The notes below the pieces were generated by a model, which was given only the letters and a program-made list of their open reading frames with translations, was not told the origin of the DNA and searched no databases. Both the position numbers and the translations under genes were made by a program. From positions 174,406,001-174,470,000 of the forward strand of contig NC_088792.1 of the NCBI RefSeq assembly GCF_011386835.1: a DNA stretch of 64,000 nucleotides. The letters are read 5' to 3'. Positions 2,151 to 27,253 of this stretch are shown one piece after another; position 1 is the first letter of the stretch, and each line of letters begins with the position of its first letter. This DNA comes from Chrysemys picta bellii (Eukaryota).

Positions 2151-2177
2151 GAGAGAGAGAGACACACACACACACAC
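2151..2177. repeat. Compound (GA)n(CA)n microsatellite
   Basis: gagagagagagacacacacacacacac. Confidence 0.9.
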
Positions 2178-3011: not shown

Positions 3012-5324
3012 TAAGTGAAATAGTTAACGTGTGGAGGCGTAAAGTGCTACGTAAGCCCCAAGTATTGTTTCTGTGGTATGGAGGATGGTGGGTTGCAATA
3101 TGAATTAAACTGTTATTGTTAGCCGTCATCTGGGATTATTTCTAAAAGAAAACAATAATCTTGTCAAACTTTCCTGCTATTTCATGTTATCCTCCACGAT
3201 CTCTTGGATGTCCTCTGTGGAGAAGGAATAGGAAGAAAGGAAGTAAGGGATGTTTTATTATATTATATCTTAAGAACAGGCAGAGGAGCTACTAAAATAA
3301 TGGCCATTACAAAACTCTATTGATCAGAATACCCGAGAAAGATATGTTACAGGCCAACCAAATAGCCTAATAAATTTAGACAAAATCTTTATTAAGAGAA
3401 GCTCAGTTTGTAAATATATATCAACGAGGGAAATAACCCCCCTTGATAAAACAATGTAATTTAAAAATAAATAAAAAACTCAAAAGCCAGGAAATTCAAA
3501 GTTAAGGTTACACTTTAAGGTGGAGAGTGTGGAAATACAAAGTTAAGATAAAGTTTGCCAAATGGTCATAACTCCGCTCTACTATCCATGGCACTCTGTA
3601 TAGTTCCATCCATCTAAAATAGATGCATGTCAACCTATCACAGCTCACTGATATGTTTAAAGTTGGATACTTTGGCAGATCTTCCAGGAACCCAGGAGTC
3701 TGGGGACATCTTAAATACTTGGGCATTTCATATGGAGCCACAGATATTTGAAAGCTCTTCCATCAAAAGAAGTTATCGTAAAAATGAAGCTCATATTTTT
3801 AAAGTTCTTATAATCAAAAATTATTTTGATTTGTAAGATCATTTTGATGCATTCCAATACTTAAAAACAAGTGTAGGAGAGATGTTTACATGGCTAGTAG
3901 CAAGTAATAGTTGAACTCCCATGATGTAGCTTGTTGCTCCTGTATAAAACTTTCCAAAAGAAAAGAAGGTAGTTTAGTTTAATAATTTAATGATTTTTTG
4001 AATGACTCTTCTTGTATGTTACAAAGATATCCAAGTGTTAGGCCAAATAGAACAGAAAAATGTAAAGAATATTATGTTCAAGAATACTCTAGATTTTGGG
4101 TAGGGAAGTCACTATAGAATTTTCCAAATTTCCCTCAACCCTCCTCCTCCCTTCATGCAAACACGTATTTCTATTAGCCCGGGCATTGTATCCTAAAGAT
4201 CATGTCAGACTAACATGATAGTTACAGAGATCTAATTACAGATTTGGGCCTGGGTCCTGTAAATACTTATGCCTTTGTGCTCAGTTTATTATTTTTTTCA
4301 TTAATTATTCATACCACAGATCTGAAGGACATCACCAATGCTTTAAGTGCTTGCTCACCTTCCTCATACCTCCACACACACACCCAATTCATTTGACCAA
4401 GGCTTTATTCAGAGCATCCCTATTTTGACAAAATCCAACATTGTAATGCTTTGAAGAAGTAATAAAGATCAACGCCACACCTTTTTACTTGGATATTTAA
4501 GCTAATTCCAATTTGCAACTATCATGTATTTTGATATTTGCTGTAGCCATAAATAAGAATTTGGGACCAGTTTTTGATCATAAGCAACATTATGATTAAG
4601 CAGCATTAATCCAGAGTAATTTCACTGGGATCAGTAAAGTTACGCTGGATTCAGACCCAAATAACTGAGCTCAGAATCTGACCCTAAATTAGATCTCTTC
4701 AAACTTCAACTCGCAGTGGCTCCTGGGAGAAAGGAAACAAGAAACTAGCTTTGAAACAACACATAAGGGCTGGACATCAAATCAAGAGTTAAACTCCAAA
4801 GAAAACAAGTCTGAAAGAGGTAAATGCCTCTGCATTCCATTTGTCCCTGCTTACCACTTGTTGCTAGGGTCCCATCTTCATAAATTATGTTCATTTTTCT
4901 GTTTCTGAGATGAGGCACTCCTTTTTTTCTCTCCGTAATTGAAAGGTCTAGATCTCCTCTTTCTTATAGTGTTGTCTATCAGTCTCCATATTCAACAGAT
5001 TTAGGATTCCTCAGCAACTGGAAGGAACATATATGAATGGTGTGTACTAGAGCTTCAGTTTCCTATATTATGGAGGAGTAATGTATATTGCAGCCAGTAG
5101 TTGAGTCAGTGCAAAATGGTTATGCTATAAAATTTATGAATTGGTAAGCAGAGTGTTTCAAATGTCCAGTCAGCTATGGGCCCTTATTCAAAGCTCTTTG
5201 AAGTTGGTGGGAGTCTGGCCATCAACTTCACTGGGTGTTAGATCAGGTCCTATGAGCTGATACGCAAAAAAAGCAAAACAAAAAATTGATCGAGAAGAAA
5301 TAAAGAGAAAAATTAGAATAAAAT

Positions 5325-5770
5325 TGTAACAGGGTGGTCTGCCCCTTTAGAGGCCGGGTTGGTGGAGAGGGAGGGCTGAGATTAGCCTGTCCCATTCTCA
5401 GGTGGAGCCCTTCGTCAGTTTAAGATCATATGTTTGAGACTGGTAGTTTGCAGAGTGTGTTATTTGAACCAACTAGGAAGGGGGTCAGGACTCTGAGTCA
5501 TGTGACTGCCTGCTGGGGAGTCTAAAACCATGCCAGCTCAGCCAGGAAAAGCCTGGAAAGGGGAGAGACAGGCTCTTCTGTGGTAGCACCTGAGTGAGGC
5601 AAGCAAGGGGACAAGTCCCTGCAGCCTCTTGGTCAGGAGAATCGCTTTGTTTTGTGTTACTCATTCATTGCATGAGGGCAATAAACCGCGCCCTCACGCA
5701 AGCTCCTGAAGTATGACTTGGGGGTAGCACCATTCTTTCCTGGGTTGGTGAGAGAGCCCATCAGCCTACA
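5325..5770 (+). mobile_element. Probable solo LTR
   Basis: Starts TGTAAC, has AATAAA near 5680, ends ...CCTACA; GC-richer than the flanks; TSD not found. Confidence 0.45.
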
Positions 5771-6284
5771 CATGTGTGAAAGGAGCAGAAAAGGAGATGG
5801 AGCAAAGAGAAAAGGAAGCCAACAGCACAGTGAGAAGATAAAGGCTCAAAATCTGTTGCCTAATGGTGATCCTGTTCAAGTCACCAGGGTTGTTTGCATG
5901 CATCTGAAGAGAATTTGGCCCATTGATAATAATATATATATAACTGCTATCTAGGGCTTGTTTTGAAATCAGTTATCAAACTGAAAATTTGAAATTGAGC
6001 TGGAAATGTATAATAATAATATGTTTGTGTTAGTATATGCAATATGTATGAGGCAAAGAGTATAAGGGTTTAAGGGCAACAGTACTAAAATCTTGCCTGA
6101 GGATTAAAATAGTTCTGAGATTTTATGATATTGCATGAAAGGGTTTATGACCCATTGACGCAACATACTATAACTATAATCCCAATAAGTATTGCAATCT
6201 TCAGGCAATGTTTTATCATTGCTGCCCTCTAACTCATAAATATTTGTAACGAACAGAGGGAGAGAAATTGACTGATGGAATAAA

Positions 6285-6530
6285 TTATTATTTATTTATT
6301 ATTTGTATTATGGTAGTGCCTAGAAGCCCCAGTTGAGAATGGGGCTCCAGTATGTTATGCTCAAATACAACGTTAGAGACAGTCTCTGGCCCAAAGACCT
6401 TTTGTTCTAAATTGACAAAACAGTTAAAGGGTGTGAGGGGAAAGAGAGATACAGAAAGGGTCAGTGACTCGTCCAAACTCAGAACTCCTGATTCCCAGTT
6501 CAGTGCAATGGACCATACTGAATGCATTAT
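6285..6530 (-). mobile_element. CORE-SINE (MIR-like) with L2-type 3' tail
   Basis: (TTAT)n tail then ttgtattatggtagtgcctagaagcccc...gagacagtctctggcccaaagac; related tails at about 46850-46985 and 53640-53703. Confidence 0.5.
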
Positions 6531-9500
6531 GGTAATGTGTGGCATAAAAGGGTTTATCACACTTTATAAGTGATGAAGCCTTGCTGATTTATTCCCCTTT
6601 CTCCAGAAACTGATCTACTTGTGAGGGAGCGGGGGCAAGACTGTGAGGGGAATACTTAACTTCTTTTCACCAGCTCTTTAGGGGTTATTTGCTAATACTG
6701 CAGATTCCTCTGAGCATGCTTTTGATGAATGATATTGAGCAAGCTTTGTATTTTTAATTTTTACATCATGTTATGTCCATCCTTGCCCTTTTTCTCTCTA
6801 CTCTGACACACGCTTAGTTGTGAAATGACAGACCTGCCGCTGTTTCTAGAATTACTTTCTAGACCTCTTACTATCTCTTTATCCTCTGTATATATCTCCA
6901 AAGCCTCTGCTTTTGTATCAGAAATTCTCCTAGTGCCTCTGCAATCTGGCATTGACCTTCATTTGAGGAGTGGGATTTAAAAAGCGGAAGTTTTAATGTC
7001 AGGATTTATAACAACAGTTAGGCTTTCTTTTAAAATGTGTCCGTAATTCAAAACACTTAAATGTACAGCTTTTGTGTGTCTTTATTACCACCCTCTCTTT
7101 TTCAGAGTCTGTCCCTTCCTTTGCTCCTTTGTCCTTGATATTTTATGAGGGTTGTGCCTGTTTTTTCTGTGTTGGAGATTTGAGAGAAATGATTTTCTGC
7201 AGCACTATAATGCTTGTCAGCGCTTTCCAATCCTGAGTTTTAATGAACAGTTTAGTTTCTTTCCTTTGCTCTTCTTTCTCTGCTGTTTTACTGCTGTGCT
7301 AGAGCTTTCCCAGTGTGAACAAGGGAGTGCATAAAAGAAAGAGACAGAGAGGTAGATTTTCTCTCTTTCCTTCCTGAATAATTCTCTCGGCCTGCATTTA
7401 TCCCTACCTCCTCTTTCTCCTTCCTTTCTTTTGAGCAGAGATCCTTGTTATTCTGGCCTTTGAGAAACCTAAAAGTCAATGCCATATCCCTAAGTCTCTT
7501 CATCATCTTTTGTGTAGCTGTATTATAATAACAATAATACTTAACATTTGCATACTCTCAACCCTCCCCTGCATAATCAGCTTTATAACAATAATAGGTC
7601 ATATTTGGAGACAGACTGAGCATCCTTGACATCACCTGAGTTTGGTGGAAGTTATTAGTGCTTCAGAACTCCTCAAGGTTTGGTTCCTTCCTCACTTCTT
7701 AGTGAATGTACTGCTTTACATATGCAACACATTGTGTAAACATTAAGAGTCAAACTCTGCCACCCACCATTATTTTCATCTTGTACTATCTTACTCTGCA
7801 AGTTACTCCCTTGGTTTTGATGGGATCACTACCAGAGGAAGGTGCCACTCCAAGTGAGAAAGGGTGGCAGAATCTGACCTTACTTAATTGTCACAACACC
7901 CTTGTGAGGAAGGTAAGCAAAAGTATCTTCATTTTGAATTAGGAAGACAGAGGTCAAGCCCAAGCCCAAGTAAGTGATAGTGGTGCTTTTAGAATTTGGG
8001 AGTCCCTGACTCCCAGTCCTATGCTCAACTTTCTAGATCATGTTGCCCTGCAGATAAGCCTGTGTGGAGTACATGCACCAATCTCTCCAAGCTAGAGGAG
8101 AATATACCTCTTACTGTAGAAGCTGCTAAAGTACTGGTACCATGAGCATTTCCCCCATATCTGTATTAAGTAGCCATTTGAATGCTAGCAGCAGCAAGTA
8201 AAGATTCTATGGAGACAGTGTGAGCAATGCCTGTGTTACAGAGGTCAAAGAGCTGCATCATTCCTCCTTAGTCATTACTGTGCAATGCACAGTCCTATAT
8301 GTGGACTACAGCGTTGAAAATGGTACCCTGGAGGGGGCAGGTTCCAGCATTGTGTGTGTAGAGTTTTCTGTCTTTGTCATCGCTCTTTCCTTTAGCTCAG
8401 TGTTGACCTAGTTTATTAGTGTTAATTTTATTAGTGCATCGGCTTCATTTTTGTGATTATTAAATGCTTTCGGGGCTTCATAATTTAATTATTTCAGTGC
8501 TTTTGTTGATATAATTGAAGCCCAAATGAGTGTAGCCGGAAACATACTTTAGTCTAACCTGATAAAGCTTGAATAGTTAAACCAATTTATTTTTTTTTGC
8601 AACCTTGTGCTTATGTAACTTGTTTAGTGGTTAAAGCCTTATTTTTTGGTTCTGGAAACAGTGACATCTCCCTCTGTTATGCCCCATTCCACTTTTAAAG
8701 TCTTTAAAAAGCGTTTGTTTTTTGGTTCTTGTAGAACATAAACAGAAGTCACCCTAACTATTTTGCTGGCTAGGATGGAAAACGTTTCACGTCCCTTTCT
8801 TCTGTGTAGCTGAGCCACCAAAAAACAAAACAAAAAGAAAGCAGCAGCAGCAGAGTGGCACAGCAGTATGATGCCCTTTGCAAGTTGGTGCCCAGAGAGA
8901 CCGCCCTGCTCGCCCACCCCTAGAACTAGTGCGAATATAAAGAATAATGTACCCATCCCGACTTCCAATCTAAGGTTGCAGTTCAATCAAGAGGTCCATT
9001 AATCGTGAGAATGAACTTTGAGATGTTTCTTCAGATCAACAGAATTTAAAGATGAAATAACACTTTTAATTTGTAAACTCGTCATTTTAATTACAAAAAG
9101 TTAAAAGTAGCCTTTGGAACTACAGTTGACTCTGAGTCTCTCTGCCTACATTCTGTGGTTTCAGAATCATGTTATCTTATATTTTAAGACCTCACACTCA
9201 ATAAAGGAGAGACCGACTAACAGAATGAAAAATAACAAAGTATTTTCCCCCAAATCTATCATTTATGAAAGGTTTCAGTGTTATTAGTAACAATCAGTTA
9301 AAAAAAAGAAATGCCATTTACTTTAGTTTCTGTACTTTTCAAAGGGTGCATTATTCAATATATTGTTAAAATATCTTGTCCCTCCAGTCTTTGCCTTCGT
9401 CCCCTTTTCTTCCCCTCACCTCTGGTTTCTTCCTCCTGTGTCATTTGTCCTTTCCCTTCTTCTTCTCTTCTGGTCCTTGCTTCACCCACTCCTTCACACC

Positions 9501-10434
9501 ACTCCTATTCTCTTCCTCTTATTTTTCCTCCTGGGTGTCCTGAAGGCCCTTCCTTTGGTGCCTCTTCTCTTATAGCTTTATTTTTTTTAGCTGTTGTGAA
9601 CTGGAGCTGGCCTTGCTATGACAGAGTGATATTTCTTATGGCTGCAGGAAGTTTCTTACGGCTGAAGGGATAGATAGGCAAAATTACTCTTGGTGGGCTG
9701 ATGCACTTTAATGCTGGCTGGGCTGGCTGCTCACAGAGAAATGATTCCTGCGTGTAACCTGAGGAAAAATAGCAACCCTTAAATAAGGCCAGATCTCCCT
9801 CTTTGGGCCTGGGATGTGAGTGGGATGTTCAACTGGACTGGGTAGGGAGGCAGGAGGAATAGTGGCACTATCCCCTCATCTGTGTGCTGGCAATCTGCAG
9901 AGAGGACCCAACCTCCATGGGAAGCCACTGCTGACCAGCTAAGAGTCTGAGGGGGAAGAAAGTGAGATTGGGGCGGGGGCGGGAACAGTACTTGAATTAT
10001 GAGAATAAGTAGGGGCGGCCCTGAATGTCAAGTGGCTTGCTTTAACGTAAACAGTAGTGAGCAGTAAAGGGGCCATAAGACAGAAGTGAGGTAGCCCCAA
10101 AGGGGACTTGCTCCCCCAGACCTCCATAATTCAAGCATTAGCCAGGAAGCAGCTGCACTGTAGGCTTCTGCTACACCAGTGCTCTTTCTTATGCCCCAGT
10201 TTCTGTGGAGGGTTCCCATGTGCTCTGCAGGACCTTGGATCAAACCTTCCTGGGCTTCACAATGTCTGGAGCTGCAAAGCCATGGTTTTTTCCTTAACGT
10301 ACCTCTAGTAGCAGAGTATAAATAGTTCTTGAGGTTAATAGTCAGCAATCATGCCTGGTCCTAGAACGGGAGACACAAGCATGAGGAAAGCTCCTTGTAT
10401 ACCTGCACAATGGCTTGCCACAGTCCAGCTCTAA

Positions 10435-10730
10435 GGGTACTTCTACACTTACCGGAGGGTCCAGCGGCAGGCAATCGATGTTCTGGGATCGATTTATCAC
10501 GTCTGGTTTAGACGCGATAAATCGATCCCGGATTGATCCCAGAAGTGCTCGCCGTCGACGCCGGTACTTCAGCTCGGCGAGAGGAGTACGCGGCATCGAC
10601 GGGGGAGCCTCCCTGCCGCGTCTGGACCCACGGTAAGTTCGGACTAAGGTACTTCGAATTCAGCTACGTTATTAACGTAGCTGAATTTGCGTACCTTAGT
10701 CCAAAGTGGGGGCTTAGTGGGGACCAGGCC
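10435..10730. mobile_element. PIF/Harbinger-type MITE related to 2713-3011
   Basis: TAA|GGGTACTTCTACACT ... AGTGGGGACCAGGCC|TAG; same two-hairpin layout (10485-10529, 10641-10702) and shared TCGACGGGGGAGCC / TCTGGACCC blocks. Confidence 0.8.
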
Positions 10731-11458
10731 TAGAAATGAAAACACTCATTTTCCTAAGCCTGTGACACGTCTATCTTTTATACTCTGTAAGTCTAATAAT
10801 GTGTCACTGGTTATATTAATTAACTTGTTCTTGTCAGCTAAAGTAATAACTTACTGTGTTCTTGTCATAGTTACAAAAGTGTATATTTTACATGTTAATG
10901 GGATAGTCATAGTGCCATTAATAATGGGGATTTAAGATCCCCCTAAGAGATCCTTAATGGTGGGTGGGTTACAGAGGTATGTTGGAGCTCTTACCTTGTT
11001 CGATAGTGTGATACCTAGATCTTCCCTTCAGCAGAAAATTGAAAATCTGAAATTTGATACAATTTACACCAGGTACAATATGAAACAGTGTTAAAATTTC
11101 AAGGGTGCTGTAGTACACTGGCAAGTTTACATTGCTATGTTTTGATCCAATGAAGCATACAAGTCAAAGTGCAAAGATATAATTTCTAGGCATCTGTGGT
11201 GTTGGGTTTTTTTTTTTTCTTCATGATCTGTGTTATCAAAATTCACAAACGTGATTCTATTTTAGTTTTATTTCCTCAATGTAACTCCGAACACTAGAGG
11301 AGTAATAATGTAATACTGTATACATGGCACTTTGAAACATCACCAATTATTTTCTGTAATTAAAACTGAATTGGAAATATCCACACCATTTCTATTTATC
11401 TTACTGATGTGCCTTTCAGTTCTGTGATAAATATCAGGAACAAGACAAATAAGGATCT

Positions 11459-11720
11459 GGGGGAGTATATGGCCCAGGGGATTAGTAATGGAATTCAGAG
11501 CCTTTCACTGCTAGGTGGCCACGTTGAATCTGGCTTGGGTTAGTAGTGATGAAAAGTCATTGTCTGATAGCTGTTCAGCATTGTCTGATAGCTGTTCAGT
11601 GACCTATGTGAAATGGATTTGTATTCTCAGGCCACTTTATATCACCAATCCCATCAGAACAATTGTCAGAGGTCTGTACGTTGGCAGTCTCAGCAGAGGC
11701 TCCAAAAACTGAGTGGGCCC
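11459..11720 (+). mobile_element. LF-SINE copy
   Basis: Blocks ggattagtaatgg..cagagcctttcac..ctaggt, ctgttcagtgacctatgtgaaatg and gttggcagtctcagcagagg match the LF-SINE consensus as I recall it. Confidence 0.7.
11558..11599. repeat. Exact 21-bp tandem duplication
   Basis: CATTGTCTGATAGCTGTTCAG x2. Confidence 0.95.
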
Positions 11721-11909
11721 TCAGCATGTCTCTGCAGCCCTCCGCTTCCCGCAGCTCCCATTGGCCTGGAACGGCGTACCGCAGCCACTGGTAGCTGCAG
11801 GGGGGCCGTGCCTGCGGACAATTAATGTCAGTAAAATGTCTTGCGGCCTGCAATCAGATTACCCTGATGGGTCACGTGCAGCCAGCAGGCCACAGGTTGC
11901 CCACCGCTG
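11721..11909. mobile_element. hAT MITE fragment (right end only)
   Basis: Ends GGTTGCCCACCGCTG, like the TIRs of 26007-26642 and 29257-29671; left TIR not seen. Confidence 0.5.
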
Positions 11910-12466
11910 CTATAGATAAAGGTCTATGTAGCACAAAAAAAATGTTTAAGTTCACTCACATCCAGATATGCATGTGATCATATTTAAAATTTTTGAGATA
12001 CAGCTATTAAACAGTTTGAATTAACCCAGAGTGGCTCACTCATGAGATAGCTGCCAAAACCTTAATGAAAAGAAAATATGTAATAACATGTCTAAGAACT
12101 TCATGGAAGAGTCAAATCATGATTTTTTTTTTCAATTGAAAGCAATATCTGGCATACAAAATTGTCAAGGATTCAATATGTAATATTCATGCTCAGCTAT
12201 GCTGAATAATTGACATGGCAAATAGTGTTTGTGATAAATGGAACAAGACAGCAGTCTATATAATGTTTTTTCAGAAGGATATTCTCTTGCGTGGAGGGTT
12301 GAGCAATTTTCTTTCATGCATAAGGTAGACCTCAAAAAAGGGAGTTCCCTATGTCTACTCCAAGATGAGTTCAGATTGGCAGCTAAGGGAGAGATGGCCA
12401 GAATTAAGTAAGGAAAGCTTATTCAGGAAAGAGATGTTGATTGACTTATACATGATGAGAATAATA

Positions 12467-12653
12467 GACCTCTACCCCAATATAACATGACCCGATATAA
12501 CACAAATTTGGATATAATGCGGTAAAGCAGTGCTCTGGGGGGGCGGGGCTGCGCACTCCGGCGGATCAAAGCAAGTTCGATATAACACGGTTTCACCTAT
12601 AACGCGGTAAGATTTTTTGGCTCCCGAGGACAGCGTTATATCAGGTAGAGGTG
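12467..12653. mobile_element. Tc1/mariner (Tigger-like) MITE
   Basis: TA TSD both sides; TIR (C)ACCTCTACCCCRATATAAC ... GTTATATCAGGTAGAGGTG; second copy at 27076-27253. Confidence 0.8.
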
Positions 12654-13009
12654 TACCTGTAAAAATTTAATTCTTTTAGTGGTTATAGACCTAGTAGAGA
12701 TGATGCCTGCATATGCTATTAATTTATCCTTTTATTTTCCAGTAGTTTTTGTTTCTGTATTTTAGACCTAGTGACTGATGCCATGTGATGTGTGGGTAAT
12801 AAATCATTTATAAGAGAAAATTGTTATAATAACTGCATGTTTTTACATATGATTGTTCTATCCTGGCCCCAATCATGGGATATGTGTCAGGGTTACAGGT
12901 TATATGCCTGTCATGTGGCAGGAGTTGAATCCTTCTGGCCCTAGTGATGACCGTTACAATTGTCATTTTGTATGTTCTCAGCATATTGTATATGTGTTAA
13001 CCCTTGATA

Positions 13010-13150
13010 ATAGTACTTAGCATTTGTATAGTGCTCTCATCCAGAGATTCCAAAGTCCTTTACAAAGAAGGTAATTATGATTTCCATTTTACAGATGAAG
13101 AAAGGTGAAATAATTCATTCAAGGTCATATGAGTCAGTGGCATATCTTGG
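13010..13150 (-). mobile_element. MIR-like CORE-SINE remnant
   Basis: ccattttacagatgaagaaa...caaggtcat core in reverse orientation. Confidence 0.45.
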
Positions 13151-14015
13151 AATGTTATCTAAACTGTCTCTGCCTCTGAAGCAGAGCTGACTCAGAGAGC
13201 AGAATTTTGCCCAATTGTGTGTTCTAAAGTAGCTTCTACCTGTATAAAGAGAGTCAAGGAACTTGTCATCGGAGTACAGCATAATTTTCAAAGGAAATCT
13301 GAACAGAAGAGGCCATGATTGCAGTTTGGAGGAGGGTTTTTTGACAAGTTAAAACATTTTGTTTAATAAATGAAATGTGAGTTCGCTTCAAGCTCTGGTG
13401 CTTAGACTGACTGAAACATTTATTGTGTACAGGAGGAAGGGCAAGGGAAATTGAACATTAAGCGTGACCCCTCTAATGTGGGATAAAAATATCAGAACAA
13501 TGAGTACAAGGAACAGTCTGTTCTTGTTTTCAACAATGGTAATAATATTGCATCATTGAAATATAATTTCATTTAGTCAGTTAAAAGGTTATTAAGCTGC
13601 TATCATGGTAAATAGGACATTAACATTGAAAATGAATGTCACTGATATCATTGAAATAAGTTCTTGCCGTTCCCTTAATATCTCTTAAAAGCTCAGCTGA
13701 ATGTTTTTGATCGGTCTAAGATTTGTAGTTTTAGGAATTATATTATATGTGCGTTCATAAAAAGTCTTTGAGAACATTGCTCATTTTAATGCTTACTTTG
13801 CCATAGTATAATGTATTTCCCAAGAATATTGAATTAATGAACATCTTGCTGCATTATGTACAGATCTGTCCATCCAATTAAGTATTTTATATTGCTGCAT
13901 TTGGAAACAAATTGCTTTTCCTCCCCTACCTCTCCCTACTCCCCACCAAAGTCAACTCTAATTTAGGGATAATATAGCTAATTCTTTTTTGAGTGGTGGT
14001 CCCTGTTGTATTCCA

Positions 14016-15705
14016 AGGAGCAATAGAATGTATTCCTCCACAATATCAAGGGACAGGTTTTTTACTCAACTTACTTCCTCATACCCAAGAAGAAGGGTGG
14101 GTGGGGAGACCAATTCTCAACCTCCACCACTTCAACCACTTTATTCACAAGCTAAAATTTTGCATGGTCACATTCGCAGCAATAATTCTGTCTTTAGAAA
14201 ATGGCATGCGGTTCATTGCTTTCGATAAGAAGGATGAATGCTGTCATGTCGATATTCATCCTGCCCACAGATGATTTCTCAGATCTGTGGTGGGCTCCGA
14301 CCATTTGCAATACAGAGTACTACCATTCAGGATAGCTACTGCCCCCTCAAACTTTACCAAGGTATTTTCTGAGGTAGCAGCTCATGTCAGACCTCATGGC
14401 CGCCTTGTCTTCCCATTTATCAATGACTGACTCCCCGCCACCAAATCTCTCCAGGAAGCCTTAATGTCAACCTTTATGATTCTCTGTCTCCTTTCCTCAT
14501 TGGGAGTCAGTGAGAACATTGAAAAATCTGTTCTTACCCCAATGCAGTCTTTGAACTTTGACGGGGCAACCTTGAACTCTCTCACTACAAGGGCCTATTT
14601 GCCCACAGATAGATTCCGGACCATGAACGATATCATAGCTCACATCACAAGCAGTCCTCAAGTAAAGGTCAAAACATCTCTGTCCCTGCTTGGCCACGTG
14701 AACTTGTGCAACTACATCACTCCATTCGCAAGACTCCACCTTTGTTACCTTCAAACATGGCTACAGTTGGTTTACTCCCAAAGCCACCATTTTGTGAACC
14801 TCATGCTGACAGTTTCTGCCAAGGTACTGTCTTCTCTCCTATTGTGGACAAATCCTCCTCACATATGTGTAGGGGTCTCCTTTCTCCCCTCTTCACTGGG
14901 CAAGACCATCATTACGGACCTGTCCCTACTAGTCTGGAGAACCCATATGGGCAACCACATGGCACAGGAAACGTGGACATCTTGAGAGGCTAGAATGAAC
15001 ATCAATATCCTGGAACTATGGGTGGTATAGAAGACATGTGAGTCCTTTCTTCCTTTTATCCTCTCTCACCATGTCCTTGTAATGTCAGACAATACTACGA
15101 TGGTCTTCTACATCAACAAACAGAGGGAAATAAGATCTGCCTCCCTGTGTGCAGAGGCAGTCAATCTCTGGAACTGGTGCATTAGCAAGCAGATCACCCT
15201 GTCTGCAGCCTACCTTCCGGGGATGCAGAATATGCTTGCAAACTCTATCAGCAGAGACTTTGTGATTGACCACAACTGGGAACTTTACAACCCGGTGTTT
15301 CATGTCATTTTCACCCAATGGGGGACCCCAACCAGGGATCTGTTTGCTTCCCAGGCCAATAGCAAGTGTGCCACATATTGCTCCAGGGGATCCCTAAGTT
15401 ACTGCTGCCAGGGCGACGCTCTCCTCCTTCCCTGGTCAGACCAGTCCAACTATGCCTTCCCTCTACTATTGCTTCAGCCATGAGTTCTATGCAAGATCCA
15501 ACTGGACAGGGTGACAGTCATCCTGATCTCCCCTTTATGGCCCAGACAGTTTTGGTTCCCCAACATTCTGCACTTGTTGTCTTGTCCCCCAATTACCCTC
15601 CCAATATTCCCCGAGCTCCTGACCCAGTGCAATGGCAGGATCAGACATCACAATCCACTACTGCTTCACCTCAGGGTGTGGTATTTGGATGGTCGTCAGC
15701 CCTAG
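14016..15705 (+). pseudogene. DIRS-A pol (RT, RNase H, MT-like domain), disrupted
   Basis: GAIECIPPQYQGTGF; LPFRIATAPSNFTKV; YxDD decayed to FIND*; SDNTTMVFYINKQ (RNase H); DLFAS..YAFP..VILISPLWPRQFWF; several frameshifts and stops. Confidence 0.85.
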
Positions 15706-16740
15706 AACAAGTGTGCTCCTCGGCCGTGCGAGACATCCCCTCTAATAGCAGAAAGGACTCCACCAGGAAATGTTACCAATCTAAATGGAAACGCATCTCA
15801 TCCTGGACACAGCAGAGAGGCGTTCTACTGAAAGCTATGGGTATCCCACTCATCCTAGACTATATCCTATATTTGAAGACATCGGGCCTATCCCTCTGTT
15901 CCTTGTGAGTCCAGTTGGCAGCTATCAGTGCATTCCATCCCCCTGCTGAAGTCTACTGTGTTTTCGCACACCTGCTAACAACTCTAATCTGGAAAGGCCT
16001 GATAATAACTCCCCCCCCCCCCCCCCCCCAAGATAACACCTCAATGGGACTTGAATCTTGTTCTTTCGGTTCTGACATGGCCCCTCTTTGAAACCTTAGC
16101 GACTTGCTCCATGTTCCTCCTCTCCAAGAAGCTAGCCTTTCTCGTAGCCATCTCATCAGAAGAAGGGTTGATGAATTGGTGCAATTATGGCAGACCCTCC
16201 ATACATTCTGTTACACAAAGATAACGTTTATTTACACCTGCACCCCAATTTTATCCCTAAAGTGGTTTCAGAATTTCATCTTCACCAATCCATTCACTTA
16301 CCTGTATTCTTCCTGAGACCACACGCGGGTCTACAGAGGAGTATAGCTCCACTCCCTAGATGTTCGACAAGATTTGGCCTTTTACCTGCAGGGAACCAAA
16401 CCATTCAGAAAGTCCCCAAGCTGTTTGTCGCTGTAGTGGAGAGAGTCAGAGGTCATGCCATCTCCAACCAGAGAATTTTGAAATGGATATCTGGTTGCAT
16501 TCTACTTTGCTATCAGTTCTCAAGCCTCCCGCCCTCCCACGGGGGTACGAAGACACTCCACAAGAGCCATGACTGTAGCATCTCTTCAGGACATACCCCT
16601 CCTAGACAGCTGTAAAGCGGCCACATGGAGCTCTGTCCACATGTTTGCAAGACATTACGCTCTGGTACAAGATTTGGCTGCTGATGCCTTATTTGGGATG
16701 GCAGTTCTCTGCTCAACCCTACTGTTCTCATCCTCATTCC
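15690..16740 (+). pseudogene. DIRS-A tyrosine recombinase, frameshifted
   Basis: RKDSTRKCYQSKWKR; RRRVDEL (catalytic R, about 16160); HSTR at 16554-16565; AATWSSVHMFARHY with Tyr at 16656-16658; C19 run at 16011-16029. Confidence 0.85.
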
Positions 16741-17456
16741 CCCCACCTATTAGGTACTGCTTGACAGTCATCCACAATGGAATAGTATAGAAACCATCAC
16801 TCGAAGAAAAAGAAGAGGAGGTTATTTACCTCTAACTGGAGGTCTTCAAGATGAATGATCCCGATCTGTATTCCACTACCTGCCCTTCTTCCCCTCTACT
16901 TTGGATCTTATTTGATTCACAGTGGAGAAGGAACAGAAGAGGCGGTCGGTCTGCCCCGCGGTTTATCACCTCGGAAGTACAAGGAGAGCCAGGGCTGATG
17001 CGTGGGCCAACAGATACTACTTTCAGATTCTCCAACTCCAGGCACATGGTGTGCATGCATAACCCACAGTGTATAGGGATCACACATCTCAAAGAACCTC
17101 CAGTTACAGGTAAGTAACCTTCTCTTCTTCTTCGAGTGATTGTTTATGTCTATTCCACAATAGGTGTGCTTGCTCGCCATGTGCACCGGTTCTGGAAGTT
17201 TTTCCCCTAGCAATACCCGTAGGGGAGCGCCCCAGCAACCCCTGGAGTGGCGCCTCCATGACGTGGTATAAGGGGCGCTGCATGCTCCCCCCCCACCCTC
17301 GGTCCCTTCTTGCTGCCAGTGAAGGGGCTTCGGAACTGTTCTGCTCCAGCTTGTCTGCAGCTTTCCTCCAGAACTCTTGTTCGTTCAGTGTAGTAGTACC
17401 TGTAGTTGAAGTAAGTTAGTGTAACTTAGTTTAGTTTAGAGCGCCTGGGCCAGGGC

Positions 17457-19380
17457 ATGACCCGTGACCCGGGTTTAAAGTAATGCGACACTTGTAGGCA
17501 ACCGGTGCCAGTGAGTGATCCGCACACGGACTGTTTACGCTGTCTGGGCGAAACCCATCTCAGCAATTGCTGCAAGATTTGCAGGTCTCTCAAGCCTCGG
17601 ACCAAGAGGGAAAGAGACATTCAGCTCTGGGCTATCCTGATGGAGTCGGTGTTGACCCTGACTCCGGTGCACCGCTCCGAGTCGGCACCGGGTACCGCGG
17701 TGTCGGTGCGTGGCGACCCCTCGGTGCCATCTACCAGTCGGCACCACTCCCCGTCCACGGGACACACCAAGAAGTCTAAGAAGAGGGGCTACCGTCTCCG
17801 AGGGGCTACCATAGCCGGTCACAACACGAATGTCAACGCTGTTCCCGTTTGTCAGTTCACTCCAGGACCCTGCCACGGCACAGCTCCCGCAGTTCCGGGC
17901 ATTGATCGCCGGCGCCTTGCCATCGCGGATCCACCGCCGGAGCTCATCGCGGAGCAGTTGCTACCGGTGGCACCGTTCCTCCATGTCGGGATCGCGGTCT
18001 CGTGGTCGGCACCGTTCCCGACACCGCTGCTCCTCCTGGTCCAGGGACAGCGACAGGTCATATGTCAGTCTGGCCTCCCTTCATAGTCGTCGATCGATGG
18101 GACAGGCCAGTCAGACTGAACAGCCTGCTCTGCCGGTGCCGCAGCAGGTGCAGTGGCACCGGGCTCCGTAGCTGGCACAGTGGTACCAATGGGCTCCATG
18201 ACCCCCGACGCAGCCCCCGGTGGGGGCTCGCACAGTGGCCGGAGCCTCGGACCGGCCTTCGGCCTCCCTGTCCCAGCCTCCAAGAAAAGAGTTGGTGAGA
18301 CGTGTATCTTCGGTTCTGTGCCTGGAGGGCGACCGAGTACCATGCAAAGTACCACACCTGCCTCCTCACCCTCCCCTGATGAGGCAATTACAGCCCCTCC
18401 TCCTTCCGTTCCGCAGGAGGACTCTAAAGCCCACCAGAAACTATTGAAAAGGGTGGCATCAAGCCTCAACCTTCAGGCTGAGGAGGTGGAGGAGCCCTCA
18501 GACTCCCTCTTCAACGTCCTGTCCACCTCGGTGCTGGGCAGGGTGGCTCTCCCACTTCACAAAGAGGTGGCAAAAAATTTAAACGCCTTGTGGCAAACCC
18601 CGGTTTCCTTGCCCCCCATCTCTAAGAGGGCTGAACAGAAGTACTTTATGCCTGCCAAGGGGCATGAATACTTGTACACTCACCCTGCCTCCAACTCCCT
18701 GGTGGTCCAGTTGGTCAACTACAGGGAGTGGCAGGGCCAACCAGCCCCTACTCTGAAAAAGAAAGACTTAAGGAGGCTGGACTCATTTGGGAGAAAGGTT
18801 TATTCGTCCTCAAGTTTCCAGTTAAGGGTGGTGAACCATCAGGCTCTCCTGGGTCGGTATGAGTTCAATTTGTGGGGCTCTCTTCCCAAATTCTAGGACT
18901 CCCTCCAGGAGCGTGACAGGAAGGAGTTCAAAGCTCTGGTGGAGGAGGGTACAGCAGCTGCCAGGGCAACCCTGCAGGCAGCGTCGGATGCGGCAGATAC
19001 GGCTGCACGGTCCATGGCTTCCGCAGTGTCCAAGAAAAGAGCATCGTGGTTCCTGTTGTCTGGACTGTCCAGTGAGGCACAGACCTCCCTGCAGGACCTC
19101 CTGTTTGAGGGCAATACTCTGTTTGCGGAACAGATGGACGTGAAGCTGCACGGCCTGAAAGATTCCCACACTGCGCTTAAGACACTTGGACTCTGTGTTC
19201 CGGCTCCAGCTAGACCTAAGTTTAAGCCTCAGCAGGCTCCCACCCAGGTCACCTGCTCTAAATATGAGCCCCCTTTAAAAAAAGTTACGGGACTATAAGA
19301 AATGCCCGCAGAGGCAGTCCTGGTCTGTTCCCGAGCCGGGGTCCTCCAATGGTAAACAGGCGGAGAAACGGCAGTTTTGA
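17457..19380 (+). pseudogene. DIRS-B Gag: N-terminal Cys/His finger plus LAP2alpha-like C-terminal domain
   Basis: ATG 17457; C-x2-C-x12-C-x2-C-x4-H...C-x2-C; RLDSFGRKVYSSSSFQLRVVNHQALLGRY...AARSMASAVSKKRASW..SG...DLLFEGNTLF; in-frame stops at 17481 and 18894 and frameshifts. Confidence 0.8.
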
Positions 19381-20621
19381 CAGGATGCTCGGGGCGACTT
19401 ACCCGTTCAGATCAGGGATCCATCTGCAATAAAGCTTCCCTTCTCCAACCAGTTGTGTGCTTTTCTCCCAGAGTGGTCGCGGCTGACCTCGGACTGATGA
19501 GTCCTCAGCACCATCTCCCAGGGCTACATCCTCCAGTTTACCTCTACCCTGCCCAACCACCCTCCGCCCTCGTCCCTCCTGGGGGACCCCTCTCACGAGG
19601 CCCTGCTCGAGCAGGAGGTGGGGCAGCTCCTTGACCTAGGAGCAGTGGAAGTGGTGCCAGCAGAGTTCAAACGCAAGGGGTACTATGCCTGCTATTTCCT
19701 TACCCCAAAGGCCAAAGGGGGGCTCAGGCCCATCCTGGACCTGTGAGGCCTGAACCAGTACACGGTAAATCTCAAGTTCCACATGGTCTCTCTGCCCTCC
19801 ATCATCTCCTCCCTGGATCCCAGGGACTGGTACGCCGCCCTCGACCTGCAGGACGTGTACTTTCACATTCATATATTCGAGTGGCACAGGCACTTCCTCT
19901 GTTTCACGGTTGGGCAGGAACACTACCAATTTACGGTCCTCCCGTTTGCCCTGTCCACTGCTCCCAGGGTATTCACAAAGTGCATGTTTGTGGTGGAGGC
20001 CTACCTCAGAGGTCGTGGGGTCCAGATTTTCCCCTATCTGGATGACTGGTCCAGGGCAGCTCCCAGTCGCAGGTGCGGGATCACATGATGCTCCTTCTGT
20101 CCACTTGCACCACCGTGGGCCTGTTGGTAAATGACACCAAGTCCATGTTAGTCCTGGTACAGCGCATGTTTATTGGAGCAGTCCTGGACGTGACATTGGC
20201 CAGGGCCTCCCTCCCACTGGACAGGTTCGAGACCCTGAAAGGATTCATCGACACAGTCACAACGTTTCCCGTGACGACAGCCAGAGCGTGTCTCCAGCTC
20301 CTGAGTCAGATGTCGGCGTGCACATATGTGGTTCGCCACATCAGACTCTGGATGAGGCCCCTCCAGCTCTGGTTGGCTTCGGTGTTGTCCCAGGCCAGAG
20401 ACAGGATGGACAAGGTACTCACTGTGCCCCAGCCGGTGATGCCTCCCTACAATGATGGTCCTCCCTGGGGAACATGATCCGCGGGTCCTGTTCAGGAGCA
20501 GGCCCCCATTGGTGGAGCTGGTGTCCAACGCTTCAGACATGGGGTGGGGAGCCCATGTGGGGGACGTTCAGACCCAAGGTCTGTGGGCTGCCCAGGACCT
20601 CGCCCTGCATATAAACGTCAA
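19378..20621 (+). pseudogene. DIRS-B reverse transcriptase and start of RNase H
   Basis: PKAKGGLRPILDL*, WYAALDLQDVYFH, LPFALSTAPRVFTK, IFPYLDDW, SNASDMGWGAH. Confidence 0.85.
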
Positions 20622-20912
20622 GGCTTGGACCAGGGCAGGACGGTACAGCTCCAGGGTCCTACGCTGGGAAGTTGGTGGTTATTTTGGCTGTAGCCTCTAT
20701 TTTTGGTTCACATGCAGTGGCTGGTCAGCGATCCTGCATGTAACTGCAGCTGGTTGTGTCCCTACCTGTGTATATCCTGGTGGAAGTGTAAGACCAGGAG
20801 TGTGTCTGCAGCTTGTCACAGCAGCACAGTGTGAGAGGGAGCCCAGCCAGGTGGGTGAGAGGGCTCAGTGGTACCCCAGTTCTAGGTGGCACCCTGAGGG
20901 GAACCCGTCACA
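20622..20912 (+). mobile_element. 3' part of an LTR fused to the broken end of DIRS-B
   Basis: Ends GGTGGCACCCTGAGGGGAACCCGTCACA, an LTR-type ...TCACA terminus; abrupt loss of DIRS homology at about 20621. Confidence 0.5.
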
Positions 20913-21314
20913 CATCCCACCTCTGCAGACACAAGCAATATACTGTACCTTGCTCCTAGAACTTCAGAGCCTGGGAACTGAATCGGTTGCAACAAACTGA
21001 AATCTCTCAAGCCCATCAGACTCTCCTTACACACTGAAGGTGCTACATTTGTTTAACTCCACATATAATTTCTTTAGCATTTATTTTATCATGACCCAAA
21101 ATGTCTCTGAATGAAGAAATAGAAAACTGGTGTAAAATGAGTTTATGGTGTACTAGGCTATACTGACTCCCTCTTCTTCAAGATCCACTAACAGTGAAAC
21201 CAGCGCTGTTCCACTCTGCAAGCAGGGGACCATTTGAGGGGGAATTGTTTCACAGGAGTTATGCACCCTAGGTAAGGCACTGAGCCCTGTCCAAGGAATC
21301 TGCCTCATGAAGGG

Positions 21315-22440
21315 TGTGACGTACTAGGATACAATCCAGACTAATGAGTAGCTGTGTCACCCCTACCCTATAACCTGCCTTTACAATGCCTTGCTGCTGT
21401 AGCCTCCAACCTGGACTGCTCACAAACAGCCTCCTCACACATGTAAGTCACTCCCAGCTATGTCAGTGTGGGTGCTGCAGCCAGCCAGCCAAACCTTGTC
21501 TCTTACCAGCCTTGGTTATGCTGCAGGGGGACCCCAATACACCCCCAGCTCTGGATATTCCCCCAGAAATATATAACCTGTCTTGCCCTGCCCTCTCCTG
21601 GACAGCACAAGTATATTAAGTCCATTATTACCAAGTGGAGTTTCCCAGACACTTCTGTTTGAATACACTGGATTAGATAAAATAGTAAAACAAGTTTACT
21701 AACTACGTAGAGAGAGATTTTAAGTGAGTACAGGTAATGAGGCATCAAAGTCAGAAATGGTCACAAGAAAATTAAAGGTAAAACTTTCTACTGGTCCTAA
21801 CGTAACAAACTACATTAGATTCAAAGCAAAGTTTTCTCACTACATGCTTTCAGCAGTCTTACTGACTAAACAATTTAGGTCAGGACCCATCCCTCACAAT
21901 CCAATAACTGCTTCCTTTGTGTCTTCAGGGCCAGTGAATGTGATGGGCAGGGAGAGAAGGGTGTGTGTGTGTGTGTGTGTGTGTCTTGTGCTGTCTGCCC
22001 CTCCTTTTTTTAGTCCTGTCCCCCCTTCAAGAAGCATTTCCAGCTGGGAGCAATGTCACAAGCAGTCTGTCTGGAAGGACTCTCCATGCTCATTCTTTGC
22101 TAAGATGTAGATTTTTGCTTCTGCCCCCTTTCCTGCCAAAGAGTGGCCACTTAGCAGGTAATGGTGCATCCGCCTTTTTACTCCTGGCAATGGTGTCAGC
22201 TTGTCCTTTGTCTCCGAGGAACTAGTTTGACCACTTCCCAGACTTATCTGGAAAACATGCTTTTAGTCAGGATCTCAGCTTGTGTTTATAATTTCACATA
22301 TAACGCTGCTACGTGCATTTTGCCATGATATTATTGATCAGCAAATTAAGAGTTTATAAATGATACCTCATAAGATATGCCTTATACAAAAATTATTCTA
22401 ATGTGTGTAAGGTGTGAATACAGGGGTGCATTCTATCACG
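21315..22440 (+). mobile_element. Probable solo LTR / LTR-like repeat (about 1.1 kb)
   Basis: TGTGAC ... TATCAC(G) ends; internal (TG)n at 21961-21983; TSD not clean. Confidence 0.5.
21961..21983. repeat. (GT)n microsatellite
   Basis: gtgtgtgtgtgtgtgtgtgtgtg. Confidence 0.95.
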
Positions 22441-26642: not shown

Positions 26643-27075
26643 CGCTAGGGAGACTCTTCCATTATAACATAACATCCTACATTTTCACTTTGTTAATTCT
26701 AAAGTTGTGACCAAGAAAATGTTCTTCCTATTCTTAGTATAATAGTCACGTCCTAAAATTAGTAGAGTACTTTTCCTTGCAAGGAATTTTAATATTATGC
26801 AATAGTAGCAAATATATCCAAAATATAGTAAATAAACTGTCAGGAAACATTTATCACAAAGTTTAAACAATATCTTCTGACTCCACATTGCCATGTTCAT
26901 CCACAGATTAGTCCGTCATTTTCCTCACACTCCTTTCCCCCGCTCTTGCCCCAAACAGATATCACTTATTTTTATGAGAACCCACAACATAACGGGTTAT
27001 AACAACATGTTTGTGCATTTTCTTCCAGAAAGGACTGTTTAACAATATTCAGTAGTCTTTGTCCTTAAGTTAATA

Positions 27076-27253
27076 TACCTCTACCCCAATATAACCCAAC
27101 CCGATATAACACGAATTCGGATATAACGCAGTAAAGCAGCGCTCCAGGGGGACGGGGCTGCGCACTCCGGCGGATCAAAGCAAGTTCGATATTTACTATA
27201 ACGCGGTAAGATTTTTTGGCTCCCGAGGACAGAGTTATATCGGGATAGACGTG
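27076..27253. mobile_element. Tc1/mariner MITE, second copy
   Basis: TA TSD; near-identical to 12467-12653 with a small internal deletion. Confidence 0.8.

What the first reader, a model, noticed from the sequence alone, without database searches (positions are those of the whole stretch)
16779..17156. Two different DIRS families joined head-to-tail; the junction recreates the circle junction encoded by the ICR
Seen: the reverse complement of 16779-16862 (GGGATCATTCATCTTGAAGACCTCCAGTTAGAGGTAAATAACCTC-CTCTTCTTTTTCTTCGAGTGATGGTTTCTATACTATTCC) aligns end to end with 17076-17156 (GGGATCACACATCTCAAAGAACCTCCAGTTACAGGTAAGTAACCTT-CTCTTCTTCTTCGAGTGATTGTTTATGTCTATTCC). So the right terminus of element A runs directly into the left terminus of element B with no spacer. 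The two RTs are clearly different (LPFRIATAPSNFTKV vs LPFALSTAPRVFTKC). Known: DIRS1 elements make a circular DNA whose junction is templated by the ICR and integrate by tyrosine recombinase without a TSD; Dictyostelium DIRS-1 inserts into itself. Inference: the recombinase of one family used the terminus (shared TTC) of another family as its target, i.e. cross-family end-targeting that builds tandem arrays. A has the recombinase but no gag, and B has gag but no recombinase, so the pair is complementary.
Basis: partly seen in the sequence, partly recalled or inferred. Interest (0 to 1): 0.7.

Follow-up and report, generated by a model that had tools for sequence, protein, structure and literature searches.

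The report
Two DIRS retrotransposons joined end-to-start
Two dead jumping genes of the DIRS type, from clearly different families, sit tail-to-head with no DNA between them, so their join looks like the closed-circle joint these elements make before inserting. It is a neat footprint of the known habit of DIRS elements to land in each other, not a new kind of system.

Summary
The inverted repeat is real: 16778-16865 against 17073-17157, 82% over 89 columns, E 2e-16.

- **What the arms are.** Arm 1 is the internal complementary region (ICR) of element A (RT-RNase H-recombinase, 13990-17127, 5'-truncated). Arm 2 is a right-terminus end plus right extension (17073-17127) running straight into the left inverted terminal repeat (ITR) of element B (17128-20623: gag-RT, 3'-truncated). 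Six related turtle copies fix B's start at 17125-17128 and show the same ICR/terminus layout.
- **Different families.** The two RTs are 34-41% identical in protein.
- **Relative age.** A looks older: CpG o/e 0.27 against 0.53, and no paralogs at 90% or more, where B has many.
- **Best reading (about 0.5).** A B circle recombined at the TTC core at A's right end, because that end resembles half of B's own site.
- **Independent case.** In a snapping-turtle locus, a young DIRS sits exactly in another DIRS's ICR at TTC|TTCGAG.
- **Open points.**
  - Whether the last 55 nt are A's own or B-type.
  - Whether a chimeric molecule formed before integration.
  - No short-read contig bridges the join.
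- **Not supported.** The "complementary pair" and "builds tandem arrays" claims.

DIRS-into-DIRS insertion is already known, and this scan found it before on other DNA of this genome (s1-329943). Interest is modest.

The parts
13990..16740 (+). Element A coding remnant. RT runs from about 13990 (LPF motif at 14320). RNase H is at about 14900-15300. The tyrosine recombinase is at about 15700-16740, with HSTR at 16554-16565 and the RHY tyrosine at 16656-16658. A is 5'-truncated with no gag, and has many stops and frameshifts.
   Evidence: Frame translations. tblastn of the L001 element onto 14107-16763 at 32-67% aa identity. A-like RT fragments P0029 and P0031 at 57-64%. A-family Logan contigs L007 and L008 at 68-72% nt identity.
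16772..16876 (+). The left ICR at about 16772-16808 is the complement of a left-ITR start. About 16809-16842 is the complement of the right extension. About 16843-16876 is the complement of the divergent right-ITR end, and it closes with the TATTCCAC boundary motif.
   Evidence: It lies directly after the recombinase ORF, as the ICRs do in L001-L006. It is complementary to 17073-17157.
16877..17072 (+). Post-ICR spacer and inner right ITR of a non-B family, taken to be A's.
   Evidence: It is collinear with the right-terminal regions of other copies but only weakly similar: local scores 43-69, against a shuffled maximum of 35 and 204-324 for an element's own left/right ITR pair. It is single-copy in four other species.
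17073..17127 (+). Divergent right-ITR end (17073-17096) plus right extension (17097-17127). Whether it is A's own or B-subfamily-type is not settled.
   Evidence: The distance from ICR end to terminus is 251 nt, against 249 nt in L002. It is 46/55 identical to the complement of A's ICR, and equally 46/55 to L003-E2. The 30-mer 17073-17102 is repeated exactly in other species: unitigs stop at 17102, and 36-61 contigs per run have loose ends before 17073.
17125..17133 (+). The join: three TTC repeats shared by the right end and the left start, before GAGTGATTG. This is the crossover core, and there is no foreign DNA.
   Evidence: Left-ITR starts of seven other copies align from 17125-17128 with unrelated host DNA upstream. 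Right ends of other copies stop in the homologous CTTT/CTTC.
17128..17315 (+). Left ITR of element B. Its first 30 nt or so form the right half of arm 2.
   Evidence: 72-77% nt identity to the left ITRs of L001-L006, and 78-83% to the right ITRs of L002, L003 and L006 in reverse complement.
17457..20623 (+). Element B coding remnant. It holds gag (LAP2alpha-like), RT (LPF motif at 19939, YLDD at 20035) and the start of RNase H. Homology to every relative stops at 20621-20623.
   Evidence: Gag relatives in six turtle genera at 63-80% aa identity, four of them carrying PF11560. RVT_1 at E 2e-8 on 19747-20085. Alignments to L001-L006.
20624..20912 (.). Unrelated high-copy repeat X that replaces B's 3' part. 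It is not part of the DIRS pair.
   Evidence: Word depth is 1,500-62,000 across the four runs (single-copy bins 4-67), and variable flanks start behind 20894/20912. Single-copy contigs span 20867-21399 in three species and 20997-21356 in the fourth. X has no similarity to any DIRS locus fetched.

Best explanation
Element A is an old DIRS1-like retrotransposon. Its 3' end is intact: recombinase, then ICR, then right ITR, then right extension. Element B belongs to a different and more recently active DIRS1-like family. As a closed circle, B recombined through a DIRS tyrosine recombinase with the short TTC/CTT core at the very end of A's right extension. That end resembles the right-hand half of B's own recombination site, the circle junction. 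The exchange put B's left ITR directly against A's right extension with no target duplication. The join therefore reads like a circle junction and pairs over about 88 nt with A's ICR, instead of the 55 nt or so that any single element shows. Later events removed A's 5' part and B's 3' part, which is now replaced by repeat X.

Shown: the anatomy, the family difference and the position of the join.

Inferred: the order of events, the enzyme and the half-site preference.
For: - **Anatomy.** It matches the published DIRS1-like layout of left ICR, 3-bp junction, right ICR, right ITR and right extension (PMC3266345). It also matches six fetched turtle copies.
- **B's start.** Seven other copies fix it at 17125-17128.
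- **Completeness of the right terminus.** The right-terminal region before it is complete and in register: 251 nt against 249 nt in L002. It is not B-like.
- **Family difference.** The RTs are 34-41% identical. About 160 of the 50%-identity cluster representatives score closer to A's RT piece than B does, at 56.8 bits.
- **A looks older than B.**
  - CpG o/e is 0.27 for A and 0.53 for B. The same measure ranks the nested L003-E2 (0.79) as younger than its host E1 (0.66).
  - A's ICR matches its terminus at 84%. The figures are 89-91% in other old copies and 100% in young L003-E2.
  - A is single-copy at 90% or more in four species, while B has many paralogs at that level.
- **Independent case of site-directed DIRS-into-DIRS insertion.** L003-E2 sits exactly in E1's ICR at TTC|TTCGAG, with conservative TTC bookkeeping. 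That is 1 of 8 unselected elements.
- **Literature.** DIRS1 elements insert into pre-existing copies (PMC5941688).
- **rE sequence.** The last 7 nt of the extension (17121-17127) agree 6/7 with A's ICR. They differ from the commonest paralog class, which breaks at 17120.
Against: - **The last 55 nt may not be A's.** The 30-mer 17073-17102 is exact in many other copies of four species, although A's ICR differs at 6 of 24 positions there. If A's end were as decayed as its ICR, this would be unlikely, roughly 1-8% by my estimate. The last 55 nt may therefore be B-type.
- **No asymmetry between the two halves.** Both halves of arm 2 match A's ICR equally: 84% for the right-end half and 82% for the left-ITR half. 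There is no sign that the right-end half is A's own.
- **No bridging contig.** No short-read contig bridges 17102-17497 in any species.
- **No reciprocal product.** B's 3' end is missing, so the expected B right end joined to A's old flank cannot be checked.
- **No general half-site preference.** Ordinary host flanks of 8 termini show no half-site similarity, p 0.06-0.87.
- **No A-family reference.** No A-family copy with termini could be obtained.
Confidence: 0.5

Rival explanations
1. The chimera formed before integration. During reverse transcription or circle closure, the end of an A-derived DNA strand and the start of a B-derived strand were aligned on, or filled in from, a B-type ICR. 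The switch happened at the conserved boundary motif. The resulting A-to-B molecule then entered the genome as one piece.
For: The change from single-copy to exactly repeated sequence falls at 17070-17073. That is the left edge of the stretch that an ICR templates (arm 2, 17073-17160) and the place of the GTGGAATA boundary motif (PMC3266345). Both halves of arm 2 are about equally distant from A's ICR. A plus B is about 6.6 kb, close to one unit length of about 6.3 kb in L001-E2 and L003-E2.
Against: It needs A to be active together with B. A has background-level CpG, the most decayed ICR/terminus pair, and no paralogs at 90% or more. A and B overlap by about 1 kb of RT, so the piece is not a simple one-unit permutation. 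The last 7 nt of the extension look A-like. The ICR of B's own subfamily was never recovered.
Confidence: 0.2
2. The join arose by recombination after separate insertions. Two DIRS elements inserted near each other, or B inserted inside or beside A's right ITR. Unequal crossover, microhomology-mediated deletion or gene conversion between their similar right ends then produced the in-register join.
For: DIRS copies cluster in the same orientation: three within the 20 kb of L001 and two in L003. The terminal 55 nt are 73-84% alike across families, and the boundary motif is shared.
Against: An intact circle-junction-like sequence with the correct TTC count still requires a pre-existing end-to-start join or an ICR donor. 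Homology between A's and B-type right ITRs is weak. No remnant of intervening DNA is present.
Confidence: 0.12
3. The join is an assembly artefact. ICRs contain the reverse complement of 'right end + left start'. An assembler could therefore walk from A's right end through ICR-like words into some left ITR.
For: 17000-17400 is extremely high-copy, and all short-read contigs break at 17081-17102. No bridging record was seen.
Against: The window has no N in 64 kb. Pieces of A, B and the right flank are all present at 1-4% divergence in four other species. Seven organisms in nine studies hold 42-86% of the sampled words of 16300-17700. The register and TTC count are as a real recombination product would give.
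Confidence: 0.05
4. The adjacency is chance. B inserted at a random TT-containing site that happened to be A's last base.
For: The locus was picked out by a reader scanning many windows.
Against: An exact zero-spacer hit on one of a few tens of thousands of termini in a genome of about 2 Gb is about 1e-5 per insertion by my rough estimate. An unselected sample of 8 elements already holds a second site-exact DIRS-in-DIRS case.
Confidence: 0.03

Closest known systems
Sauropsid DIRS1-like retrotransposons (for example AcDIRS1/AcDIRS2 of Anolis carolinensis; Piednoel et al. 2011, PMC3266345)
   Same: Units of about 6 kb. ITRs have a short divergent outer part and a conserved part of 140-190 nt, with a right extension of about 26-31 nt. 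Two adjacent ICRs of about 40 and 58-64 nt overlap at a 3-bp junction directly after the recombinase. The elements start and end in NTT-type trinucleotides and make no target duplication.
   Different: Here two copies of different families are fused at their termini and both are truncated and decayed. The methyltransferase domain was not examined.
Self-insertion ('homing') of DIRS-1 in Dictyostelium and of DIRS1 in zebrafish (cited in PMC5941688; the 1984 Dictyostelium report is from my own knowledge and was not read here)
   Same: A DIRS element lands in pre-existing DIRS sequence, which gives clusters.
   Different: The reports I could read do not describe a base-exact right-end-to-left-start join between different families, or insertion at the ICR pseudo-site.
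Tandem integration of phages and integrative elements at attL/attR half-sites by tyrosine integrases (general knowledge, analogy only)
   Same: A circular element recombines with a resident element's end because that end keeps half of the attachment site. The result is a head-to-tail array with a regenerated attP-like joint.
   Different: Those are DNA elements with defined arm and core sites. For DIRS the site requirements are not known, and no biochemistry exists for these turtle elements.
Earlier finding s1-329943 of this scan (young DIRS nested in an old DIRS gag, same genome)
   Same: DIRS-in-DIRS insertion with a short shared core containing TT.
   Different: That insertion is in coding sequence, not at a terminus or ICR. 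It does not recreate a circle junction.

Membership tests
DIRS1-like retrotransposons (element B) | Reverse transcriptase of the DIRS/Gypsy-like type | tested here: met
   PF00078 RVT_1 at E 2e-8 (34.6 bits, cut-off 29.6) on 19747-20085. YLDD at 20035.
DIRS1-like retrotransposons (element B) | Left ITR that is the inverse of the family's right ITR, and whose first 33 nt or so are complementary to the family's ICR | tested here: met
   17128-17313 is 78-83% identical to the reverse-complemented right ITRs of L002, L003 and L006. 17082-17166 is 78-82% identical to their reverse-complemented ICRs.
DIRS1-like retrotransposons (element B) | Tyrosine recombinase, ICR and right ITR in the same copy | tested here: not met
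   B's homology ends at 20623 and no B-type right ITR exists in the window. Fuller relatives L001-E2, L003-E1/E2 and L006 have all three. The window copy is therefore a truncated member.
DIRS1-like retrotransposons (element A) | RT, RNase H and tyrosine recombinase in this order | tested here: met
   tblastn collinearity with L001-E2 over 14107-16763. HSTR and RHY motifs are present. Pfam gave no hit on A's short decayed pieces, even at E up to 1 for the three pieces retested. A-like fragment P0029 carries PF00078.
DIRS1-like retrotransposons (element A) | ICR just after the recombinase, complementary to a right-ITR end plus right extension about 200 nt downstream | tested here: met
   16809-16865 against 17073-17127 is 46/55 identical. 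The spacing is 251 nt, as in L002 at 249 nt.
DIRS1-like retrotransposons (element A) | Left ITR complementary to the left ICR, in the same copy | tested here: not met
   A is cut at about 13990 inside the RT region. The only left-ITR start that pairs with A's left ICR is B's, at 27/33.
DIRS1-like retrotransposons (both) | Methyltransferase-like domain after RNase H | not tested
   Not examined.
DIRS1-like retrotransposons (both) | Integration without target-site duplication at a short core identical to the circle junction | tested here: inconclusive
   The outer ends of both window copies are lost. In relatives no duplication is seen. The nested L003-E2 shows conservative exchange within TTC repeats.
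Head-to-tail DIRS array made by terminus targeting | Right extension followed by a left-ITR start with zero spacer and the junction length encoded by an ICR | tested here: met
   17097-17136 is collinear with the reverse-complemented ICRs of five other copies. It is 3 nt shorter than A's own ICR predicts.
Head-to-tail DIRS array made by terminus targeting | Such joins recur more often than chance | tested here: inconclusive
   None of 8 other sampled elements has an end-to-start neighbour, and 1 of 8 sits at an ICR pseudo-site. A genome-wide census is not possible with these tools.

The most novel reading that the evidence does not exclude
The join was not made by integration at all. It may be a fossil of the ICR-guided circle-closing step acting in trans between two families. 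In this reading an A-derived strand was extended or ligated on a B-type ICR at the conserved boundary motif, giving a chimeric A-to-B molecule. That would be natural sequence evidence for the long-proposed but untested ICR-splint model, and for exchange of termini between DIRS families.
Probability: 0.18. Interest if true: 0.6.

Novelty: new member of a known kind. Interest (0 to 1): 0.35.

Why it matters
How DIRS elements integrate is known only from a sequence-based model, with no biochemistry behind it. A base-exact join between a right extension and a left ITR of another family bears on this. So does an independent insertion exactly at an ICR pseudo-site. Together they suggest that half of the circle junction can be enough to attract the recombination reaction. 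That would explain why DIRS copies cluster. It also gives concrete substrates for testing site recognition, and a search pattern (an ICR-length inverted repeat of about 88 nt instead of about 55 nt) for finding such joins genome-wide. For the host genome the locus is an ordinary intronic fossil.

Tried and rejected
- **Pfam on the window's ORF pieces.** All A and B pieces gave nothing at E up to 0.01. One B RT piece later hit RVT_1.
- **Search for A-family copies with termini.** Two word searches and the full HMMER search gave only short Logan contigs, L007 and L008, without termini. A's own right end could therefore not be checked independently.
- **Bridging the join with reads.** All Logan contigs break in the high-copy ITR.
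- **An 'A alone' or 'B alone' state.** None was seen in the four species laid, but the A/B join itself was not bridged in any of them.
- **Exact 30-mer scan of metagenome contigs.** Nothing was found.
- **Half-site similarity in ordinary host flanks.** Not significant.
- **A as the 3' half of a permuted B circle.** Rejected. The RT regions overlap by about 1 kb at 34-41% identity, and A's right ITR is not complementary to B's left ITR.
- **A shared hotspot at 20623.** L002 also loses homology there, but I rejected this. L002 simply continues into RNase H sequence that the window lacks.
- **Two key subscription papers.** Poulter and Butler 2015 and Goodwin and Poulter 2001 are not held.

Full report
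**Observation**

The reverse complement of 16778-16865 aligns with 17073-17157 at 82% over 89 columns. A BLAST of 13900-21100 against the whole window gives E 2.5e-16, and this is the only nucleotide similarity between the two elements. The arms are 207 nt apart, so the 'no spacer' claim has to be judged on the termini, not on the arms.

**The two elements**

- **Element A.** Frame translations and tblastn with a fuller relative (L001-E2) show that A runs from about 13990. It holds RT, RNase H, a tyrosine recombinase with HSTR and RHY motifs, and its ORF ends near 16740. It has many stops and frameshifts and no gag.
- **Element B.** B has a leader, a LAP2alpha-like gag from about 17457, RT (RVT_1 at E 2e-8, YLDD at 20035) and the first part of RNase H. 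Its similarity to every relative stops at 20621-20623.
- **Family difference.** The RTs are 40.8% identical over 98 aa and 33.6% over 119 aa. In a full HMMER search with A's RT piece, the best relatives are short A-like fragments at 57-64%, and everything else is at or below about 40%. B scores 56.8 bits, behind about 160 cluster representatives. They are different families.

**What the arms are**

Six loci with B-family copies were fetched from Terrapene, Chrysemys, Macrochelys, Mauremys (two species) and Gopherus. All show the layout described for DIRS1-like elements (PMC3266345):

- Directly after the recombinase comes an ICR. Its left part is the complement of the first 33 nt or so of the left ITR.
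- The right part of the ICR is the complement of a right extension of about 30 nt plus the divergent end of the right ITR.
- A spacer of about 54 nt follows, then the right ITR, then the extension.

In the young copy L003-E2 the ICR matches both termini perfectly, 55/55 and 33/33. In older copies the match is 85-97%.

By position and sequence, arm 1 is A's ICR. Arm 2 is collinear with the circle junctions predicted by the ICRs of five other copies. It is not itself an ICR, for two reasons. To its right it continues into B's left ITR, leader and gag. To its left it continues into a right-ITR region.

The left-ITR starts of seven other copies align from 17125-17128 and have unrelated host DNA upstream. 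The distance from the end of A's ICR to 17127 is 251 nt, against 249 nt in L002. So a complete right terminus runs into B's left ITR inside a run of three TTC, with nothing between.

An inverted repeat of about 55 nt between an ICR and the right end is intrinsic to any single DIRS element. The extra 33 nt are the signature of the end-to-start join.

**Whose right terminus is it?**

16866-17072 is only weakly similar to any B-family right-terminal region. Local scores are 43-69, against a shuffled maximum of 35 and 204-324 for an element's own left/right ITR pair. It is single-copy in four other species. It is therefore not B's, and it is contiguous with A.

The last 55 nt (17073-17127) are less clear.

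- They are 46/55 identical to the complement of A's ICR, but equally 46/55 to L003-E2.
- Logan unitigs of three species stop exactly at 17102, and 36-61 contigs per run diverge just before 17073. The 30-mer 17073-17102 therefore occurs exactly in many other copies. A's ICR differs from it at 6 of 24 positions.
- Either A's end happens to have stayed unmutated and close to an abundant family's sequence, or arm 2 as a whole is of B type and the family switch lies at about 17070. That position is where the conserved GTGGAATA boundary motif belongs.
- In favour of A, the last 7 nt of the extension agree 6/7 with A's ICR. They differ from the commonest paralog class, which breaks at 17120.

I could not recover an A-family copy with termini, or an ICR of B's own subfamily, to settle this.

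**Relative age**

- CpG o/e is 0.27 in A, which is window background level. It is 0.53 in B. The same measure ranks the nested L003-E2 (0.79) as younger than its host E1 (0.66).
- A's ICR/terminus identity of 84% is the lowest in the sample.
- At 90% likeness or more, A's interior is single-copy in four species. B's interior has word depths of 1,000-18,000 in three of them against a single-copy level near 50, and proportionally less in the shallow run X5.
- The two A-family contigs found are about 70% identical to A and equally CpG-poor. A natively CpG-poor family therefore cannot be excluded.

On balance, A was old when B arrived.

**Is the join real and shared?**

- Seven coded organisms from nine studies hold 42-86% of the sampled words of 16300-17700.
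- In four of them, contigs 1-2% diverged cover 15400-17102.
- Pieces 1-6% diverged cover parts of B.
- Contigs 1-1.5% diverged cover 20867-21399 in three species and 20997-21356 in the fourth.

No listed contig bridges 17102-17497, because that stretch is extremely high-copy. The arrangement is thus consistent with an old, shared locus, but the join itself was not bridged by independent data.

**Does DIRS target DIRS termini?**

In L003 (Macrochelys) a young element, E2, sits in the same orientation exactly inside the ICR of E1. It lies between the complement of E1's extension and the TTCGAG that mimics a left-ITR start. The TTC counts are 3 in the circle junction and 2 in the target, giving 3 on the left and 2 on the right. 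That fits a conservative reciprocal exchange.

This is one of eight elements sampled without regard to their neighbours. The other insertions have ordinary host flanks with no significant half-site similarity, p 0.06-0.87. L001 carries three DIRS copies of different families in the same orientation within 20 kb. The literature reports that DIRS1 elements insert into pre-existing copies (PMC5941688).

Most insertions therefore use arbitrary sites. A minority go to sequences that resemble half of the circle junction, far more often than chance placement would give. By my rough estimate chance is about 1e-5 per insertion for a cognate site.

**Mechanism**

- **Most likely (about 0.5).** A B circle recombined at the TTC/CTT core that ends A's right extension, helped by similarity of A's end to the right half of B's own site. 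A's 5' part and B's 3' part were lost later.
- **Main rival (about 0.2).** An A-to-B chimera formed on a B-type ICR before integration. This explains a switch at about 17070 and the near unit length of A plus B (about 6.6 kb). It requires an active A and is at odds with the age signals.
- **Less likely.** Post-insertional recombination between neighbouring elements (about 0.12), an assembly walk through ICR-like words (about 0.05) and chance (about 0.03).

**Claims not supported**

'The pair is complementary' has no basis. Both copies are dead, their missing parts are truncations, and B's 3' end is replaced by an unrelated high-copy repeat at 20624-20912. 'Builds tandem arrays' rests on this single join. 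I did not verify that the host gene is FARS2.

**Novelty**

The elements are ordinary sauropsid-type DIRS1-like retrotransposons, and DIRS-into-DIRS insertion is known. The modest additions are these:

- a base-exact, cross-family end-to-start join;
- the ICR pseudo-site insertion;
- conservation of the terminal and ICR sequences at 73-89% between families whose RTs are 34-41% identical.

All comparisons are between natural copies.

Noticed in passing
L003:14241-20650 (Macrochelys suwanniensis CM065749.1): A young DIRS1-like copy, E2, has CpG o/e 0.79 and an ICR identical to both its termini. It is inserted in the same orientation exactly inside the ICR of an older copy, E1, at TTC|TTCGAG. E1's remaining ICR, right ITR and extension follow after E2's end at 20613.
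   Followed up: yes
window 20624-20912: A very high-copy repeat: word depth 1,500-62,000 across four other species, with variable flanks behind 20894/20912. It ends in ...CCCGTCACA, abuts B's truncation point and has no similarity to any DIRS locus fetched. Its class (LTR or SINE) was not determined.
   Followed up: partly
L001:5500-20834 (Terrapene carolina triunguis PRFB02000237.1): Three DIRS1-like copies lie in the same orientation within 20 kb. E1 belongs to a third family with different termini. E2's right ITR is cut at about 14650 by another repeat.
   Followed up: partly
window 12462-12645 and 27071-27244: Two direct copies, 90-96% identical, of a repeat of about 180 nt lie 14.6 kb apart and bracket the DIRS pair at a distance. 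They are probably two copies of an interspersed repeat.
   Followed up: no
window 63224-63406: A weak similarity (34-38% over 45-61 aa) to the N-terminal cysteine-rich part of DIRS gag, near the window's end. It may be a third DIRS fragment.
   Followed up: no
window 16877-17160; read laying joints 16880>17073, 16897>17072/17073, 16917>17087: In the four species laid, most of these joints recur: a few contigs join sequence like A's post-ICR stretch directly to 17073 onward, skipping 169-192 nt. Paralogs with a much shorter right-terminal region may therefore exist. The matching sides are only 20-36 nt, so this is uncertain.
   Followed up: no
L002:12409-12900, L004:11417-11531, L005: Several B-family copies carry large internal deletions that remove RNase H and the recombinase but keep the ICR and/or right ITR. 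This is the shape expected of non-autonomous derivatives.
   Followed up: no
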